DNA of 63,826 nt, filler included, from Octopus bimaculoides (taxonomy: Eukaryota), in the NCBI RefSeq assembly GCF_001194135.2. It is 9 parts of 9 records of this genome, joined end to end, with 100 filler letters (N's around TTAATTAATTAA, not from the genome) between each part and the next. Parts side by side here need not be neighbours in the genome. Positions count along the whole stretch, not along the records: positions 44,184 to 49,542 come from NW_026351484.1; 8 more parts are not named here. The stretch is one strand, 5' to 3'. The position numbers were made by a program, and so were the translations under genes. Below the pieces are notes generated by a model. That model had not been told where the DNA came from, ran no database searches, and was given only the letters and a program-made list of their open reading frames with translations. Below are positions 40,561-49,651 of this stretch, one piece after another (the stretch's first letter is position 1; every line of letters starts with the position of its first letter).

Positions 40561-40845
40561 AGAAATAACACATAACAGCCTTCTTTCAGTTTTTTCCTAC
40601 CATATCCTCTAACAAGGTTTTAAGGCTATGGTTGAAGACACTTGCCTAAGGTGCCATGCAGTGGGACTGAACCCAGAACCATGTGGTTGGAAAAAAAATA
40701 TCAAACATCTTTCTCTTCTATCACTAACATTGCTTGCATTTTTCCATCACCCTTTCGCTCAGGTTCTCTTCCCACATAGCTGTGTGTAAAGATAACACAG
40801 GGAAGAGAGAACCGCTGAGATATGTACACACACAATTTAGACATA

Positions 40846-40951
40846 CAAGGGGTGTTCCAAAAGTTTTGAAACCAGCTATGATGCCAAAAGAATGGTATTC
40901 TTCTGTCGTTTCCTTAACCATGTTGGGCTCAAAACTTTTGGCACACCCTTG
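40846..40951. mobile_element. Tc1/mariner-like MITE (106 bp) with TA TSD
   Basis: TA-caaggggtgttccaaaagttttg..caaaacttttggcacacccttg-TA, ~22-bp TIR with 1 mismatch and 1 gap. Confidence 0.8.
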
Positions 40952-43790: not shown

Positions 43791-44469
43791 GAGAAACACT
43801 GGAAACACATTGTTGAAATCTTGAAGCTACAAGCTAACGCATGATTAATTCAAAACTATGTGAATAAGTTACACATCACACTTGACTGAAGGCTAAAAGG
43901 CTAAATGCTTTGAGAGGTGAATTTCTGTACAAGGTCCAGAATGTAAGCCAGGAAAGAATGAGACTTGTGCAAAATGGAGCTTTACAACAAAAGCCACCAC
44001 AAATAAAAAAAACAATAGCATTACTGTCTAGGTCAATGGTGCAAAGCATACATTATTATTATTTTTTTTTTTTTTTTTTTTTTNNNNNNNNNNNNNNNNN
44101 NNNNNNNNNNNNNNNNNNNNNNNNNNNTTAATTAATTAANNNNNNNNNNNNNNNNNNNNNNNNNNNNNNNNNNNNNNNNNNNNTATATATATATATATGT
44201 ATATATACATACATATATATATAATATATATATACACATATATATAGAAGTTTTCGATATCTAGTTTGGATTCTTTCCCATCAAATTTGATTGCAAAGAA
44301 TCCAAACTAGATCGAAAACATCTATATCTTTATATACATACATACATATATATATATTTAAATAATTATCGCATCCGGAAAGTTTGCTGCAAACATATGT
44401 GTTTGTGGGGGAGGGTGGTTCCATGTTTAAAATAACACGGAAAAAATAAATAGTTACCAGGGTAGCAAA

Positions 44470-45026
44470 AAAGAGTATGCGTTCCAGTTTGGTGATGGTA
44501 GAGTCGGGACAAGGCACGACAGTCAGACGGTATTCGATGACGGATGCGATGTACACGTTCGCCACACCGCCCGACCTTTTAGGGATAGCTTCCTCTCGGC
44601 CCATTGCCGGGTGAGAGTGACCACCCTAGTCGTTATTTCGCCCCAGTTCTTCTCCATTTGGAGGTCCGGACCGAACCAGACACCGAGCAATTTAACCGGC
44701 CTGTCGGTCCAGCGTCCCACAGTGGAGACGCTGTTAGACGGCATGGGCTTGCTTCTCCAGGTGCCGAGCCGCAAGCCCACTGACTTATCCCGGTTAACTT
44801 TTGCTCCCGTTACCGCTTCGTATTCTTTTAGTCCCTCGCCGACCAGCTCGATGTGCTTTTGGCTCGACACTATGACGGTGACGTCGTCCGCGTGTGCAGA
44901 CACGCTCGTCCCACATCCCAGCTCTCATGGGATGCCCCTCAGCGTCGCCAGCTTCCGCAGTAGAGGCTCAAGAGTCAATACATACAGAAGGGCCGAGAAG
45001 GGGCATCCTTGACGAACCGAACGCAT

Positions 45027-45027
<1 letters not shown>
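44470..45027 (-). mobile_element. L1/Tx1-clade LINE RT fragment abutting (GATA)n at 45028-45093
   Basis: SVRQGCPFSALLYVLTLEPLLRKL, SAHADDVTVIV, GAKVNRDKS, KLLGVWFG and LSLKGRA. Confidence 0.85.
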
Positions 45028-45093
<66 letters not shown>

Positions 45094-45249
45094 CGTATCC
45101 GGACATACACTAACATTTTTGCTACACAAAAAAATATTGGTCGAATGAATTAATAAAATTTTACATGAGTTAAGAATTCACTTTACCCCTTCTTATTGGC
45201 TGAAACAATTCATCTTTTGTCTTGCGGCAAACTTTCCTAGAACCTTTAC

Positions 45250-46870
45250 ATGCACAATCTTAGGACGATACCTCTTGCCTAATCAAATCCGCTATGTCAC
45301 GTCGGACAGTTGATTCAACACATTATAGGGTCCTTCCCATCAACTCTGCAGCTTTGGTAACCGTACCGTCTTCCGCTAGGAATTATAAAGCTACGCTTCA
45401 TCTCCCTCCTTAAAGTTGATCTCGCAAACGCTGGCACCATACCGATGTTTCATCACTCCACCAGTGAAAATTTCAACGCTTCCCTAACTTACTGGTGTAT
45501 CTTTGTCAGTCTCTCTTGCAGATGATTCAAATAGCTGGAGGTTTTCCTCGGCAGTTCTTCATCTGGTTGTCTTTCCATCAACAGATCAACCAGGAGTCTC
45601 ACCTCGTGGATCAGCATCAGCTTTGCAGGTGAATAGCCAGTAGATTCACGCGTTGCCGAATGCTATGCCATTAACAAAGTTCTTGGCTAGTTCTTGTCCT
45701 TCTCCACCATCCCATCCGACTATGGTCTCAATGGGATTGTCCTCGTCTTCTTAATCCCCAACAACGTACAACACTCCTGAAACACAGCTAATTCTAAGTC
45801 CCTACCCTGGTCGGAATGTAGCTCATGAGATATCACAAACCGGCACAACTGGTCCACCAACACTTGTGCAACAAACGTGGCTTCTTAGTCAGGGATGGCA
45901 TAGGCTTCTGATCACTTTGTAAAGTACTCCGTGACCACACACATGTACCGACTTCCTCTTTCAGCGAATGGCAACAGTCCAGCAATATCCACATCTACTC
46001 TTTCCATAGGCGCACCCACTTGGTACAGCTGAAGAGGGGCACACCTCCGCTTCTTGAGTCCCTTCTTGCGCAGCATACATCACAGGAACGACGTCATTCT
46101 TCAACGTCTTGACGCATGCCCGTCCAATAAAATCTCTGCCGCAGCCGATTCACAGTCTTCTTTACCCACAAATGTCCACTCGTAATCAGATCATGAATTT
46201 CTTCNNNNNNNNNNNNNNNNNNNNNNNNNNNNNNNNNNNNNNNNNNNNNNNNNNNNNNNNNNNNNNNNNNNNNNNNNNNNNNNNNNNNNNNNNNNNNNNN
46301 NNNNNNNNNNNNNNNNNNNNNNNNNNNNNNNNNTTAGTTCTTCTTCAGTCGACACATGCCCAGTCACTGCAGTTCGGTTACAATTCTTACTACGATCTTC
46401 CCCTCCACTACAATGCTTGCAATCCTGGTCACAAGGTGACGACCCAAACAGACAGCGTTGCCATGTACCAGCCCCGTATGGTGCTGTACCTCATAGTTGT
46501 GCTGATCCAGCATCCCTAGCCAGCGTGCCATTTGTCCCTCCAGATTCTTCAGTGTCTTCAACCACTTGGGTGCTGCATTGTCCGTTCTGAGAGTAAAGTT
46601 AGACCCATACAGTTACGGATGGAAAAAGTCAATGCTCTTCATCACAGTAGTTCCGCTTTGGTGGACCGAGCTTCTTTCTGTAGTACGCCACCATATATTC
46701 CTTGTAGTCCTTCTTTTGAGACTATACTTCGCTAATACCGTGATCACTGGCGTCACTGTCCAGGATGAATGGCTTGCCCTGGTCTTGGTATAGTAACGCA
46801 GGGGAACTCACCAACGCATGTTTGAGTTCGTCAAAAGTTCTCTGGGTCAGTGCAGTCCATGTAAACTATC
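45250..46870 (-). mobile_element. Second Ty3/Gypsy pol relic (RNase H, integrase, GPY module)
   Basis: FILDSDASDHGI..RNYC, LEGQMARWL..H..HGNA, PMERVDVDIAG..LHSDQGR..SDGMVEK and WEGPY, heavily decayed. Confidence 0.8.
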
Positions 46871-47719
46871 GTGCTATTTTTCCATAATTCTCTTTCGCTT
46901 GACCTAGATATTTTTAATTTTTGCTGAATTTCTAGTGTCTAAGAGTGGAAATTGATGAGTACGATGTTTTCTTTTCAAATATTATTCTGAAAAATTTGAA
47001 GAGACAAATTTACTTTATCTTGTCTTATTCATTTTGCCCCATCTAAATTTGTCTTTTATATGCTCAAAGAGAGCAGAGATAATTTTGTGAAATAGCATTC
47101 TGAATGTTATGGTATTTTTGATGCATTTAGAGAATGTCATTTGCTTAGCTGATGCAGTTTTGTTAGGTAGTGAACATTTGTAAAACTACTATTTTCCTCA
47201 AAGTCAAAAGTGTAGCCAGTATTACTCATTGTACCCCACCACCCTTACTGGAGATAGAGAAAGCGGGCTTTTGAAATAGCTGTCCCATACATGTTGAAAT
47301 TTCCCCGNNNNNNNNNNNNNNNNNNNNNNNNNNNNNNNNNNNNNNNNNNNNNNNNNNNNNNNNNNNNNNNNNNNNNNNNNNNNNNNNNNNNNGTGAGGAT
47401 TTTCCCTTTATCTTGATAGCAAAACAATGAAGGGAAACTTATTGAAAACAAAATGTATTAAAATCCATGTCTTTCAAATCTATATCTCTCCACCCACCCA
47501 CCCACTCACACACACACACACTCATCATGGCTTTGGAGCAGCAACAACCACTAAAATGGTATATTTTTCTTTTCCTTTTTTTGTAATTTTCTGTCATTTT
47601 ATCGTAATCTATCCCCTTCTTCCCTCCTCCATTGTACTTTCCACAATGAAGATAAAAATGAACACTGCAAGTGAAAGTGTGATGAAAAGAATTGAATTGT
47701 AAAGCAACATTTTCAGTCA

Positions 47720-47725
47720 TTTATT
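47720..47725 (-). terminator. Candidate polyadenylation signal AATAAA ~170 nt after the stop of the 47894 ORF
   Basis: tttatt on the plus strand at 47720-47725, with T-rich sequence further downstream on the minus strand. The hexamer is common in AT-rich DNA. Confidence 0.35.
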
Positions 47726-47893
47726 TAAAATTTCTCTAACTCAGCAAATCCAATTACATCCAATTGATGGGTTTTGAGATATCAATTTTCTATATTTCCA
47801 TAACTGTAATTCTTGTGTATGAGGCGCACACAGAATTTCAAGTGCTCAGTCTCTCCATGGATTAAATTCAGTCTTGGCTACGCAAACTACTGT

Positions 47894-49540
47894 TTAATGT
47901 TTTCTTTTAACGGTTTGAAGAACCAAAGGATTGATACTCTTTGGTAAAGAACTGCGACGAGAATAAAATGATGTGTCTGGCGCCCGTGTACGTTTTTTAC
48001 CAAAAATACTGCGTGTTTTATCTCGCAATTTGCTTGCTGCCTTTTTGAAGATACGACGACCCACATTTGGTTTCAGTGAATCTCGATATCGATATGATGG
48101 CTCTGTATCTTCCAGTGATTCTGGTGGCCCTACATTATATGGTTGTGCAGTGGCGTGAGAAACCCGTTGTTTTGGTACCCATCGTAAATTATAAGCTTCC
48201 AGTGCATCTAGTAATGGTCTAGATTGCTCTAAACGTGAAGGACCGTGCTTGGATTTAAATCGCACAACATTAGTGTGATAGTCTGGTACATATGGTGAAC
48301 TCTGTGGTTGTGCAGTGGCGGAAGAGCCCCGTTGTTTTGGTGCCCGTTGTAAAAAATAAGCTTCCGGTTCATTTTGTAATGGTCTATATTGCTGTGAACG
48401 TGAACGGCCTTGCTTGGATATATGTGGCTCTACATTCATGTGATAGTCTGATACATGTCGTGGAGGTCGCATCTCAACTCTCAGTGCAGCTCCGTGTGTG
48501 CGTCGTGGTATTACCTTGTGGTGATGTTCTGATACATATTGTGAACTATGTGGTTGTGCAGAGGAGTGAGAGCCCCGTCGTTTTGGTGCCCGTTGTAAAA
48601 AATAATCTTCCAGTTCATCTAGTGATGGTCTAGATTGCTGTGAACGTGAACGGCCTTGCTTGGATATATGTGGCTCTACATTCATGTGATAGTCTGATAC
48701 ATATCGTGGAGGTCGCACCTCAACTCTCAGTGCAGCTCCGTGTGTGCGTCGTGGTGTAACCTTGTGGTGATATTCTGATACATATCGTGAATTATCGTGA
48801 ACTTGATCGGATTTTGGGTCTGCTGAATTATTATTTTTCTGTAAATACGAAACACTCCGACACCTGAGGGGCGCTGAAAATTTGCTTTCAGAAATTCTTC
48901 TAGGAGGATAAATTGCTTTTCTTTCAGATCTGTTATATGACATGTCTACCGCCGAAATTCTGCATTCACGTGACGACATACGGTGAGGATATGGCTTTGG
49001 TATACTGAGGTGTTGTTTGTGTGTTGTGAAATGTTGGCATTCCTCAAATGGTCTTCTAGTTGACGAAATTCCATCATTATTTTCTGGTTGTTCCTTCCTT
49101 GAATGTTTAGGAATATAGAACGAGCATATTAAATTAGTCGTATTATTTTGAATCATTTCCGTGGCTGTATTAATGCGATGTGGGTTTATTCTTGATATCG
49201 AAGATATTTTCCCGCTTTTGATTATGCAGCTTTTGTTCGCTGCAATATTTTCCTGGTCTTCCTTTGGTAAAGAGTTACCTAATTCTGCGCTTCTCTTGTT
49301 CAATTTAACCAGATGGTTGTCAGGGCAGACATCCTTTTCTCCATTCAGTGTCTTACATTCCAATTTGTTGTTTACATACACGTTCTTATCGTCTGCTACT
49401 TCACATAAACATCTCTTAGTTTTCTCGTTTTTTGAATAGTCACGTTTTGCTGTTTCATCAACATCGTTTAACTGGTCATTGTTTTGACCTTCCTTAACAT
49501 CTATTTGAATCATTTCCATCACATCACTAATATGATTCCC
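47894..49540 (-). CDS. Uncharacterised protein of at least 548 aa, predicted disordered, with an internal hierarchical repeat; probable terminal exon or single-exon gene, 5' end in a gap
   Basis: Stop-free for 1647 nt in AT-rich DNA. The frame stays open past the track's GTG start (GNHISDVMEMIQ) into the gap at 49543. The repeat periods (246 and 165 bp) are multiples of 3, and no TE domain is recognised. Confidence 0.7.
   Translation of the reverse strand, partial: GNHISDVMEMIQIDVKEGQNNDQLNDVDETAKRDYSKNEKTKRCLCEVADDKNVYVNNKLECKTLNGEKDVCPDNHLVKLNKRSAELGNSLPKEDQENIAANKSCIIKSGKISSISRINPHRINTATEMIQNNTTNLICSFYIPKHSRKEQPENNDGISSTRRPFEECQHFTTHKQHLSIPKPYPHRMSSRECRISAVDMSYNRSERKAIYPPRRISESKFSAPLRCRSVSYLQKNNNSADPKSDQVHDNSRYVSEYHHKVTPRRTHGAALRVEVRPPRYVSDYHMNVEPHISKQGRSRSQQSRPSLDELEDYFLQRAPKRRGSHSSAQPHSSQYVSEHHHKVIPRRTHGAALRVEMRPPRHVSDYHMNVEPHISKQGRSRSQQYRPLQNEPEAYFLQRAPKQRGSSATAQPQSSPYVPDYHTNVVRFKSKHGPSRLEQSRPLLDALEAYNLRWVPKQRVSHATAQPYNVGPPESLEDTEPSYRYRDSLKPNVGRRIFKKAASKLRDKTRSIFGKKRTRAPDTSFYSRRSSLPKSINPLVLQTVKRKH
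48134..48790 (-). repeat. Coding higher-order tandem repeat A-B-C-A-B-C-B-C (81/84/81-bp units)
   Basis: A=SRYVSEYHHKVTPRRTHGAALRVEVRP, B=PRYVSDYHMNVEPHISKQGRSRSQQSRP, C=SLDELEDYFLQRAPKRRGSHSSAQPHS. Anchor ggtcta at 48216, 48381 and 48627. Confidence 0.95.
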
Positions 49541-49651
49541 AGNNNNNNNNNNNNNNNNNNNNNNNNNNNNNNNNNNNNNNNNNNNNTTAATTAATTAANN
49601 NNNNNNNNNNNNNNNNNNNNNNNNNNNNNNNNNNNNNNNNNNTTCTTCTTC

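What the first reader, a model, noticed from the sequence alone, without database searches (positions are those of the whole stretch)
47894..49540. Orphan ORF of at least 548 aa with a hierarchical ABC-ABC-BC repeat, co-oriented downstream of a cadherin exon
Seen: a 1647-nt stop-free frame, open into the gap at 49543. The N/K/D/E/C-rich first third is followed by an R/S/H/P/Y-rich array of three unit types (27, 28 and 27 aa), duplicated as blocks of 246 bp and then 165 bp. A1/A2 differ at 4 of 27 residues and B1/B2 at 2 of 28, while the third B-C is more diverged. A, B and C share a Y-x4-5-P register, suggesting one ancestral ~27-aa unit. The tail is basic (RRIFKK, KKRTR, KRKH), PKA-type RRxS sites occur, and AATAAA lies ~170 nt after the stop. 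I recognise no domain or TE protein. Inference: a lineage-specific disordered protein. It is either (i) a same-strand gene nested in a cadherin intron, or (ii) a large terminal exon giving the cadherin a cytoplasmic tail, as vertebrate PCDH15 does with its CD1-CD3 tails.
Basis: partly seen in the sequence, partly recalled or inferred. Interest (0 to 1): 0.72.

Follow-up and report, generated by a model that had tools for sequence, protein, structure and literature searches.

The report
Octopus-only disordered repeat-protein gene
The long open frame is real and belongs to a small family of intronless genes found only in octopuses that encode floppy, strongly basic repeat proteins of unknown role; it has nothing to do with a cadherin.

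Summary
A 549-codon frame, stop included, lies on the minus strand at 47894-49540, with a 246-bp unit repeated twice and then a 165-bp unit. The "orphan" label and the cadherin link do not hold.

The ORF matches about 14 predicted proteins at E values down to 1e-190. Those that carry a species name are from Octopus vulgaris, O. sinensis and O. bimaculoides. A profile search of 1.84 billion representative proteins found nothing else. In O. vulgaris the relatives are single-exon genes in two tandem clusters on one chromosome. Each has its own ATG, about 68 codons upstream of where this piece is cut. Each has a conserved upstream block with a perfect TGACGTCA site and an invariant AATAAA 171 nt after the stop. 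No cadherin lies within 10 kb.

AlphaFold gives mean pLDDT 38 and only one C-terminal basic helix. The protein has pI 9.9 and no Pfam, PDB or transposon match.

Amino-acid evolution is close to neutral (dN/dS 0.6-1.1). The reading frame is nevertheless kept: every indel among close copies is a multiple of three, and at least 13 ORFs are intact.

Best reading: a real, fast-evolving, lineage-restricted gene whose product works through composition and short motifs. Its function is inferred only.

The parts
47894..49540 (-). Protein-coding sequence: 548 codons plus the TAA stop. It is cut at its 5' end by the edge of the piece. By alignment with homologues about 68 N-terminal codons, including the ATG, are missing, so the full length is predicted at about 616 aa.
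   Evidence: Translation. Homologues at E 1e-190 to 5e-49. Alignment places the window's first residue at position 69 of P0001/P0002. Nucleotide homology of 91-92% runs to the very edge at 49542.
48788..49540 (-). Family-defining N-terminal region (aa 1-251 of the partial protein). It is polar and N/K/D/E/S-rich, with short near-invariant motifs: CEVADD, LECKTL, SISRINPH, ENNDxISS and RRISESK.
   Evidence: Alignments A1 and A2 with lists of invariant columns. 75-82% aa identity to the O. vulgaris and O. sinensis copies.
48890..48901 (-). RRIS (aa 214-217), a PKA-type basophilic phosphorylation consensus. Ser217 is conserved in at least 90% of family members.
   Evidence: Motif scan. Near-invariant S217, K220, S222 and L225 in A2. 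Actual phosphorylation is inferred, not tested.
48131..48787 (-). Repeat array A1-B1-C1-A2-B2-C2-B3-C3 (aa 252-470). Units: A1 48787-48707, B1 48706-48623, C1 48622-48542, A2 48541-48461, B2 48460-48377, C2 48376-48296, B3 48295-48212, C3 48211-48131.
   Evidence: TRF periods of 246 and 165 bp. Unit coordinates and pairwise differences. The A-B relation is significant and C is unrelated. The same three unit types occur in P0011, P0012 and the O. vulgaris paralogues, with different copy numbers.
47897..48130 (-). Basic C-terminal tail (aa 471-548, pI 11.0). The motif GRRIFKKAAxKLRDKxRSIFGKKR is conserved in the closest paralogues.
   Evidence: Alignment A1, columns 798-860. pI and charge.
48005..48055 (-). 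The only predicted secondary-structure element: a basic amphipathic helix, aa 496-512 (RIFKKAASKLRDKTRSI).
   Evidence: AlphaFold2 model m9bd99e73eae4: helix 496-512, local pLDDT about 50.
47942..47959 (-). RRSSLP (aa 528-533): an RRxS site that also fits the loose 14-3-3 pattern RxxSxP. It is conserved in P0001 and P0013.
   Evidence: Motif scan. Alignment A1 for P0001 and the ORF translations for P0013. Its function is inferred.
47720..47725 (-). AATAAA polyadenylation signal, 171 nt after the stop. It is invariant, with its context TTAAATAAATGACT, in four O. vulgaris paralogues.
   Evidence: Alignment of the 3' flanks.
46867..47893 (-). 3' UTR and 3' flank that were duplicated together with the gene. 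The region is interrupted by an 85-N assembly gap at 47309-47393. Homology to the paralogues ends at 46867, where retroelement debris begins.
   Evidence: blastn identities of 80-90% to the 3' flanks of all four O. vulgaris and O. sinensis cluster copies, best to the P0002 copy. Alignment.

Best explanation
This is the 3' nine-tenths of an intronless protein-coding gene on the minus strand. It belongs to a gene family seen so far only in the genus Octopus. O. vulgaris has at least 7 genes, in two tandem clusters on one chromosome.

Shown:
- The product has no signal peptide-like or hydrophobic segment, is strongly basic (pI 9.9, net charge about +40) and is predicted to be almost wholly disordered.
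- It has three parts: a polar N-terminal region that defines the family through a handful of short invariant motifs; an array of about 27-aa R/S/H/P/Y units whose number and type change quickly between paralogues; and a basic tail with one amphipathic helix.
- In the homologues the gene is a transcription-unit-sized module. A conserved block about 110 bp long, containing a perfect cAMP-response-element palindrome (TGACGTCA), sits about 80 bp before the ATG. It is followed by a single coding exon and an invariant AATAAA.
- Selection keeps the frame open, but amino-acid replacement is nearly neutral.

Inferred:
- The protein acts through bulk properties (length, positive charge, multivalent short motifs) rather than a fold.
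- The most likely role is an intracellular, phosphorylation-tunable polycationic scaffold that binds acidic partners or nucleic acids.
- Transcription would run from a CREB/ATF-type promoter.
- The conserved RRxS sites would be the switch.

It is not part of a cadherin gene.
For: Family membership and restriction:
- 6 hits, E 1e-190 to 5e-49, five named as Octopus and one unnamed.
- A profile search of 1.84e9 representatives returns only 8 clusters. The named ones are all Octopus; two short fragments carry no species name.

Intronless tandem genes:
- Gene spans equal 3 x (aa + 1) for P0001, P0002, P0004, P0013, P0010, P0007 and P0008.
- Four copies lie within 30-40 kb in both O. vulgaris and O. 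sinensis.

Own start and promoter:
- Homologues have a Met and 68 further codons.
- A conserved upstream block carries an invariant TGACGTCA at -79 to -82 in five genes, and at -95 to -138 from the annotated ATG in three.
- For the deepest paralogue this block is more conserved than the coding sequence: 0.81 against 0.57-0.64.

Poly(A) signal: the AATAAA is conserved.

Real coding sequence:
- In-frame indels are 16 of 16 in the coding sequence, against 9 of 36 multiples of three in the 3' flank.
- P(no stop) is 5e-4 for one 1929-nt copy after 9% random change.
- At least 13 ORFs of 388-1134 aa are intact.

Disorder: mean pLDDT 38, one helix at aa 496-512.

Charge and motifs.

Nearly neutral amino-acid change:
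- dN/dS 0.6-1.1.
- Substitutions are spread evenly over codon positions.
- Coding-sequence identity equals 3' UTR identity.
Against: - No transcription or protein evidence could be obtained here. Look-ups returned only genome contigs, and the four Logan contigs look genomic.
- The window lacks the 5' end, so its own ATG and promoter are unverified.
- dN/dS near 1 is also what a decaying sequence would show. The O. sinensis copy 1 ends early relative to its O. vulgaris orthologue.
- The alignment behind the AlphaFold model has only 7 sequences, so low confidence could partly reflect shallow input.
- The CRE, PKA-site, 14-3-3 and scaffold roles are motif-based inferences with no test.
- The literature search found nothing on this family.
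Confidence: 0.55

Rival explanations
1. The window copy, or the whole family, is a functionless or decaying duplicated ORF. It would be young, spread by tandem duplication and gene conversion, and open only because too little time has passed.
For: - dN/dS 0.8-1.1 against the closest copies.
- Substitutions are uniform over codon positions.
- Coding-sequence identity equals 3' UTR identity.
- O. sinensis copy 1 is truncated relative to O. vulgaris P0004.
- The 5' end of the window copy is unseen.
- No expression data are available.
Against: - Frame retention is far beyond chance: 16 of 16 indels in frame against 9 of 36 in the flank.
- P(no stop) is 5e-4 at 9% divergence and 4e-4 for 741 nt at 30%.
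- Subfamilies separated by dS 0.5-0.8 still have intact ORFs.
- Short motifs, the upstream block and the AATAAA are conserved.
Confidence: 0.15
2. The family encodes a rapidly evolving reproductive protein: a testis or sperm basic protein expressed from a CREM/CREB-type promoter. This would be a special case of the main reading with a specific tissue.
For: - The genes are intronless, tandemly duplicated, basic and Arg/Ser-rich, evolve quickly and have a proximal CRE.
- From general knowledge of mammalian post-meiotic genes such as protamines and transition proteins, this combination is typical of them.
- Repeat units in the window show nominal dN/dS of about 3-6 (p about 0.003).
Against: - There are no tissue data.
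- The analogy comes from mammals, not molluscs.
- The excess of replacement changes is not repeated in paralogue arrays.
- The protein is far larger and less Arg-rich than known cephalopod protamines (own knowledge).
Confidence: 0.12
3. The protein is a cephalopod material or optical protein in the manner of reflectins or histidine-rich beak proteins: a disordered, His/Tyr/Arg-rich protein that self-assembles into condensates.
For: It shares a gene style with reflectins (own knowledge of reflectins): intronless, tandem arrays, cephalopod-restricted, cationic, disordered, repeat-built and with phosphorylation sites. The repeats contain 8% His and 6% Tyr.
Against: - No reflectin motif is present, and Met is only 1.5%.
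- No homologues were found in squid or cuttlefish.
- The protein is Lys-rich, unlike reflectins (own knowledge).
- It has no signal peptide, as beak or sucker proteins would need.
Confidence: 0.08
4. The ORF is a large terminal exon that gives a cadherin a cytoplasmic tail, or a gene nested in a cadherin intron.
For: None within the piece. The adjacency was seen only in the joined window.
Against: - The scan program states that the pieces are unrelated.
- Homologues are stand-alone single-exon genes with their own Met and upstream block.
- In P0002 an in-frame stop lies 14 codons upstream of the Met.
- No cadherin Pfam hit appears among the neighbours in O. vulgaris or O. sinensis.
Confidence: 0.02
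5. The ORF belongs to a transposable element.
For: Retroelement debris lies 1 kb downstream in the same piece.
Against: - No Pfam hit for the ORF.
- Only about 14 relatives among 15 billion proteins, lying in two local clusters rather than dispersed.
- Homology with the paralogue flanks stops exactly where the retroelement fragment starts.
Confidence: 0.02

Closest known systems
Octopus vulgaris hypothetical proteins CAI9723198 (P0013) and neighbours P0001/P0002/P0004; O. sinensis LOC118763368 (XP_036358764)
   Same: - The same family: E 1e-190 to 1e-99.
- 91-92% nucleotide and 80-82% amino-acid identity over the N-terminal 247 codons for three of the four copies (84-88% nt, 75% aa for P0004).
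- The same A/B/C unit types.
- The same C-terminal GRRIFKKAAxKLRDK...KR tail in P0001, P0002 and P0013.
- The same 3' UTR with AATAAA.
   Different: - The repeat arrays differ in number and sequence. O. vulgaris amplifies a 162-bp B-C unit up to 3.9 times, while the window has 246 bp x2 plus 165 bp.
- Overall identity is only 55-66%.
- The window copy has no closer counterpart in the databases.
O. bimaculoides LOC106872223 (XP_014774617), O. sinensis XP_036359032 'serine/arginine repetitive matrix protein 2-like', O. vulgaris CAI9722905/6 and CAI9723204
   Same: They share the N-terminal region, the motifs CEVADD and RRISESK, and the upstream TGACGTCA block, shown for P0007, P0008 and P0010.
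   Different: - 30-49% identity.
- Other repeat modules (LRDSLELA, DPEEFQHQVxPF...WDPDTSRWSRDF, SPR-rich).
- A shorter C-terminus ending in MPDIxRxLF.
- The 'SRRM2-like' name is an automatic label based on composition.
Reflectins (cephalopod iridophore proteins)
   Same: This is a resemblance in how they work, not membership. Both are cephalopod-restricted, intronless, tandemly arrayed genes for cationic, disordered, repeat-built proteins with phosphorylation sites. The reflectin side rests on my own knowledge.
   Different: - No reflectin motif is present.
- Met is low and Lys high.
- No sequence similarity was detected in any search.
Vertebrate PCDH15 CD1-CD3 cytoplasmic tails
   Same: Both are long, disordered, basic, Pro/Ser-rich sequences encoded by one large exon.
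   Different: There is no linkage to cadherin exons. The homologues have their own Met and upstream block and are single-exon genes.

Membership tests
Octopus LOC118763368-like family (uncharacterised; no Pfam entry) | Significant full-length sequence similarity, including the N-terminal region with the CEVADD, LECKTL, SISRINPH, ENNDxISS and RRISESK motifs | tested here: met
   E 1e-190 to 5e-49. Invariant columns in A1 and A2.
Octopus LOC118763368-like family (uncharacterised; no Pfam entry) | Single coding exon | tested here: met
   549 uninterrupted codons in the window. Homologue gene spans equal the CDS length.
Octopus LOC118763368-like family (uncharacterised; no Pfam entry) | Conserved upstream block with TGACGTCA about 80 bp before the ATG | not testable with these tools
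   Present in all 8 homologues examined. The window piece ends about 68 codons short of the ATG.
Octopus LOC118763368-like family (uncharacterised; no Pfam entry) | Conserved 3' UTR with AATAAA about 171 nt after the stop | tested here: met
   Alignment of five 3' flanks.
Cadherin / protocadherin (cytoplasmic-tail exon) | Physical and splicing continuity with cadherin-repeat and transmembrane exons | tested here: not met
   - There is no cadherin in the piece.
- Homologues are stand-alone genes with their own Met.
- No cadherin Pfam hit among the neighbours.
- Splicing itself was not testable.
Reflectin | Reflectin motifs [M/F]D(x)5MD(x)5MD and Met/Tyr/Arg-rich, Lys-poor composition | tested here: not met
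   Regex gave zero matches. Met is 1.5% and Lys 9% in the N-terminal region.
SRRM2-like / RS-domain proteins | Dense runs of RS/SR dipeptides | tested here: not met
   Only 19 RS/SR dipeptides in 548 aa, with no run longer than RSRS.
CCDC85 (PF10226, precomputed hit on P0001) | Match to the Pfam model above threshold with a real aligned stretch | tested here: not met
   In P0001 the summed score is 24.7 against a cut-off of 23.8, but no single stretch passes. The match lies in the repeats. The window protein has no hit.
Transposable-element protein (gag/pol/transposase) | Pfam TE domain, or a high-copy dispersed distribution | tested here: not met
   No Pfam hit. About 14 relatives in two local clusters.

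The most novel reading that the evidence does not exclude
Octopuses carry a private, rapidly diversifying family of intronless genes with a conserved cAMP-response-element-type upstream site. Their products would be polycationic, fully disordered proteins selected only for length, charge and a few phospho-switch motifs. That would be a second, independent reflectin-style invention of composition-driven, phosphorylation-tuned assembly proteins in cephalopods, possibly tied to neuronal activity or spermiogenesis.
Probability: 0.15. Interest if true: 0.6.

Novelty: new member of a known kind. Interest (0 to 1): 0.33.

Why it matters
Cephalopod genomes hold hundreds of lineage-restricted genes whose roles are unknown. 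This family is a clean case for studying them. It is small, clustered and intronless, and it has a sharply conserved upstream element and a reading frame that is protected while the amino-acid sequence drifts almost freely. That combination bears on how disordered, composition-driven proteins are born, amplified and kept.

For annotation, the result removes a false link to a cadherin gene. It also adds an unannotated member, with a distinct 246-bp super-repeat, to a family that gene predictors currently mis-model. One example is the O. sinensis isoform that splices across paralogues.

Tried and rejected
- **Pfam on the ORF and six homologues:** nothing real. The CCDC85, COMM_HN and SLT_L hits in P0001 are sums over repeats with no passing stretch.
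- **PDB sequence search with the family profile:** no hit at E <= 1.
- **Fold search:** not run, because the model is disordered (pLDDT 38) and any match would be meaningless.
- **Rfam and tRNA scans of the piece:** nothing.
- **Exact look-up of the window product from its first Met:** not on record.
- **Look-ups of P0002, P0004, P0013 and P0007, in the hope of transcript contigs:** genome records only.
- **Logan contigs carrying P0006:** first considered as possible transcripts, then rejected. They carry 500 nt of upstream sequence including the TGACGTCA block and a TA microsatellite, and they have no poly(A).
- **Second protein search with the repeat and tail half:** only two fragments at 48-50% identity.
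- **Literature searches by accession and by topic:** nothing on this family.
- **Positive selection on the repeats:** the nominal dN/dS of 3-6 and the codon-position skew of 16:27:7 were not reproduced in paralogue arrays (43:36:32), so no claim is made.
- **Antisense coding:** the skew fits the third positions of the plus-strand ORF 48292-48633, so this idea was considered. It was dropped for the same lack of replication and because that ORF is short and arises from the repeats.
Full report
**What is in the sequence**

The piece 44184-49542 carries a stop-free frame of 548 codons plus TAA on the minus strand at 47894-49540. The frame is still open where the piece ends.

Tandem Repeats Finder reports two arrays:
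- a 246-bp period, 2.1 copies, 91% matches, score 888, at 48275-48795;
- a 165-bp period, 1.9 copies, 81% matches, at 48140-48456.

- A1 and A2 differ at 4 of 27 residues.
- B1 and B2 differ at 3 of 28 residues.
- A and B share their first 12 residues (RYVS[ED]YHxxVxP; alignment z = 6.6).
- C is not significantly similar to A or B, so a single ancestral unit is supported only for A and B.
- The basic tail motifs and three RRxS sites are present.
- AATAAA lies at 47725-47720.

**It is not an orphan**

A search of 5.8 billion protein clusters gave six relatives, E 1e-190 to 5e-49. Five are from O. vulgaris, O. sinensis or O. bimaculoides. One comes from unnamed sequencing runs.

A profile built from these proteins was searched with HMMER against 1.84 billion representative proteins. 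It found only eight clusters. Exact look-up named six of them as Octopus proteins; the other two are short UniParc fragments.

A second search with only the repeat and tail half returned just those two fragments, at 48-50% identity. On present data the family is therefore restricted to Octopus. The window copy has no closer annotated counterpart.

The window is 91-92% identical in nucleotides to three of the four clustered O. vulgaris and O. sinensis copies over the N-terminal 741 nt. This fits a different Octopus species or an unannotated paralogue. I could not tell which.

**Gene structure, taken from the relatives**

- **Single exon.** In O. vulgaris the genes for P0001, P0002, P0004, P0013, P0010, P0007 and P0008 each span exactly 3 x (aa + 1) bases.
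- **Clusters.** They lie on chromosome OX597818.1 in one cluster at 93.91-93.98 Mb, where P0001 is inverted, and another at 51.59-51.61 Mb. O. sinensis has the same four-copy arrangement.
- **Start.** All begin with their own Met (MNT[TI]E...). Alignment places the window's first residue at position 69, so about 68 codons are missing beyond the edge of the piece.
- **Upstream block.** All eight genes examined share a conserved block of about 110 bp whose core, ATGACTGTCACATTCATTGRTGACGTCAYAGTTGAAAG, contains a perfect TGACGTCA palindrome.
  - The palindrome sits at -79 to -82 from the ATG in five genes. In the other three, whose annotated starts differ, it sits at -95 to -138.
  - A (TAC)n/(TAA)n microsatellite precedes the block.
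  - For the deepest paralogue, P0010, the block is better conserved than the coding sequence: 0.81 against 0.57-0.64.
- **Downstream.** The first 270 nt or so after the stop, with the AATAAA, are conserved in all copies. Homology to the paralogue flanks runs to 46867.

**The cadherin idea**

- The relatives are stand-alone genes.
- In P0002 an in-frame stop lies 14 codons upstream of the Met.
- The genes within 10 kb in O. vulgaris are other family members, a zf-LITAF-like gene, a class-V aminotransferase and a few ORFs without Pfam hits. None is a cadherin.

**Not a transposon**

The ORF has no Pfam hit. Its relatives are few and locally clustered.

The retroelement debris in the same piece is separate:
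- a gypsy-like RNase H fragment at 46367-46865 and an integrase fragment at 45492-46079, both on the minus strand and full of stops and frameshifts;
- a LINE-type reverse-transcriptase fragment at 44526-44924.

Paralogue homology ends where this debris begins.

**The protein**

- AlphaFold2, run on a 7-sequence alignment, gives mean pLDDT 38 and pTM 0.16. It predicts no secondary structure except one helix at aa 496-512, RIFKKAASKLRDKTRSI.
- GRAVY is -1.13, pI is 9.9 and net charge is about +40.
- There is no PDB sequence relative.
- The family is defined by short motifs in a polar N-terminal region: CEVADD, LECKTL, SISRINPH, ENNDxISS and RRISESK. Ser217 of the RRIS site is conserved in at least 90% of members.
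- The repeat modules differ widely between members.

**Evolution: the unusual part**

Amino-acid change is close to neutral:
- Nei-Gojobori dN/dS is 0.8-1.1 between the window and its closest relatives, and 0.6-0.8 for most other pairs, including pairs with dS of 0.5-0.8.
- Substitutions are spread evenly over the three codon positions.
- The coding sequence is no more conserved than the 3' UTR; both are about 91% identical.

But the reading frame is clearly protected:
- Among close copies all 16 internal indels are multiples of three, against 9 of 36 in the 3' flank.
- Random substitution at 9% leaves a 1929-nt copy stop-free in only 0.05% of trials. At 30% it leaves the 741-nt N-terminal segment stop-free in 0.04% of trials.
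- At least 13 family ORFs of 388-1134 aa are intact.

I read this as selection for a translated product of the right length and composition, with a few fixed motifs. It is neither a decaying sequence nor a folded domain.

Within the window's repeats, replacement changes outnumber silent ones: 17 to 1 for ABC1 against ABC2 and about 28 to 3.5 for BC1 against BC3 (pooled binomial p about 0.003). Paralogue arrays do not show this skew, so I make no claim of positive selection.

**Mechanism**

- **Shown:** the gene architecture, the conservation of the upstream block and of the AATAAA, frame retention, the predicted disorder, and the charge.
- **Inferred:**
  - The TGACGTCA block is a CREB/ATF-type proximal promoter.
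  - The RRxS sites are phospho-switches of the PKA type.
  - The protein acts as an intracellular polycationic, multivalent scaffold whose function depends on bulk properties.
- **Possible settings I cannot separate without expression data:** reproductive tissue (a fast-evolving basic protein with a CRE promoter), neurons (an activity-induced gene), or a reflectin-like assembly protein. It is not a reflectin by sequence.

**Limits**

- No transcript or peptide evidence was obtainable with these tools.
- The window's own 5' end is missing.
- The AlphaFold alignment is shallow.
- Literature searches by accession and topic found nothing on this family.

**Verdict**

This is a real, ordinary-looking but uncharacterised lineage-restricted gene. 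It is a new member of a family already predicted in other Octopus genomes, and the cadherin interpretation is rejected. Interest is moderate to low. The points worth following are the protected frame combined with near-neutral sequence change, and the sharply conserved upstream TGACGTCA block.

Noticed in passing
window 45492-46865 (-): Degraded gypsy-like retroelement pol. RNase H pieces (PF17919, E 7e-11; PF17917) lie at 46367-46865 and integrase-core pieces at 45492-46079. The element is broken by stops, frameshifts and a 119-N gap at 46215-46333. It starts exactly where homology to the paralogue 3' flanks ends.
   Followed up: partly
window 44526-45023 (-): LINE-type reverse-transcriptase fragment (weak RVT_1 hit, E 0.002). 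It is followed by a perfect (GATA)x16.8 microsatellite at 45027-45093.
   Followed up: partly
window 44224-44347: A 124-nt palindrome with two 62-nt arms, 73% complementary and with no spacer. Its core is GTTTTCGATATCTAGTTTGGATTCTTT / AAAGAATCCAAACTAGATCGAAAAC. It is embedded in TA-rich microsatellites and could be a small foldback or MITE-like element.
   Followed up: no
window 48131-48787 (-), plus-strand ORF 48292-48633: The 50 differences between repeat units fall 16:27:7 on sense codon positions 1:2:3. The favoured position coincides with the third position of a 113-aa antisense ORF. Repeats of the paralogues do not show this pattern (43:36:32), so it is probably chance.
   Followed up: yes
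L001 about 9890-10000 and 6504-6615; L002, L008, L009, L004 (upstream of each family ATG): Every family gene has a (TAC)n or (TAA)n microsatellite immediately upstream of the conserved TGACGTCA block. A CTGTCA (MEIS/TGIF-like) half-site lies 17 nt before the palindrome.
   Followed up: partly
L003 10001-40951: The O. sinensis RefSeq model LOC118763368 isoform X2 joins the first 387 aa of paralogue copy 2 to a segment 30 kb downstream (40733-40948), skipping two whole paralogues. The genomic ORF at that position continues uninterrupted for 597 aa. This is probably a prediction artefact in a repeat-rich tandem cluster.
   Followed up: partly
L003 1219-2733 vs L002 10001-11407: O. sinensis copy 1 ends early (...PPPPHHFT*) compared with its O. 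vulgaris orthologue P0004. One cluster member may be decaying.
   Followed up: no
L001 21490-21932 and L008 1-3904: Between the family genes lie large predicted genes (1378 and 1514 aa, no Pfam hit). They contain a short stretch similar to the window's repeats (blastn 48511-48551; YVSEYHFNV-like). They may be further, longer family members.
   Followed up: no
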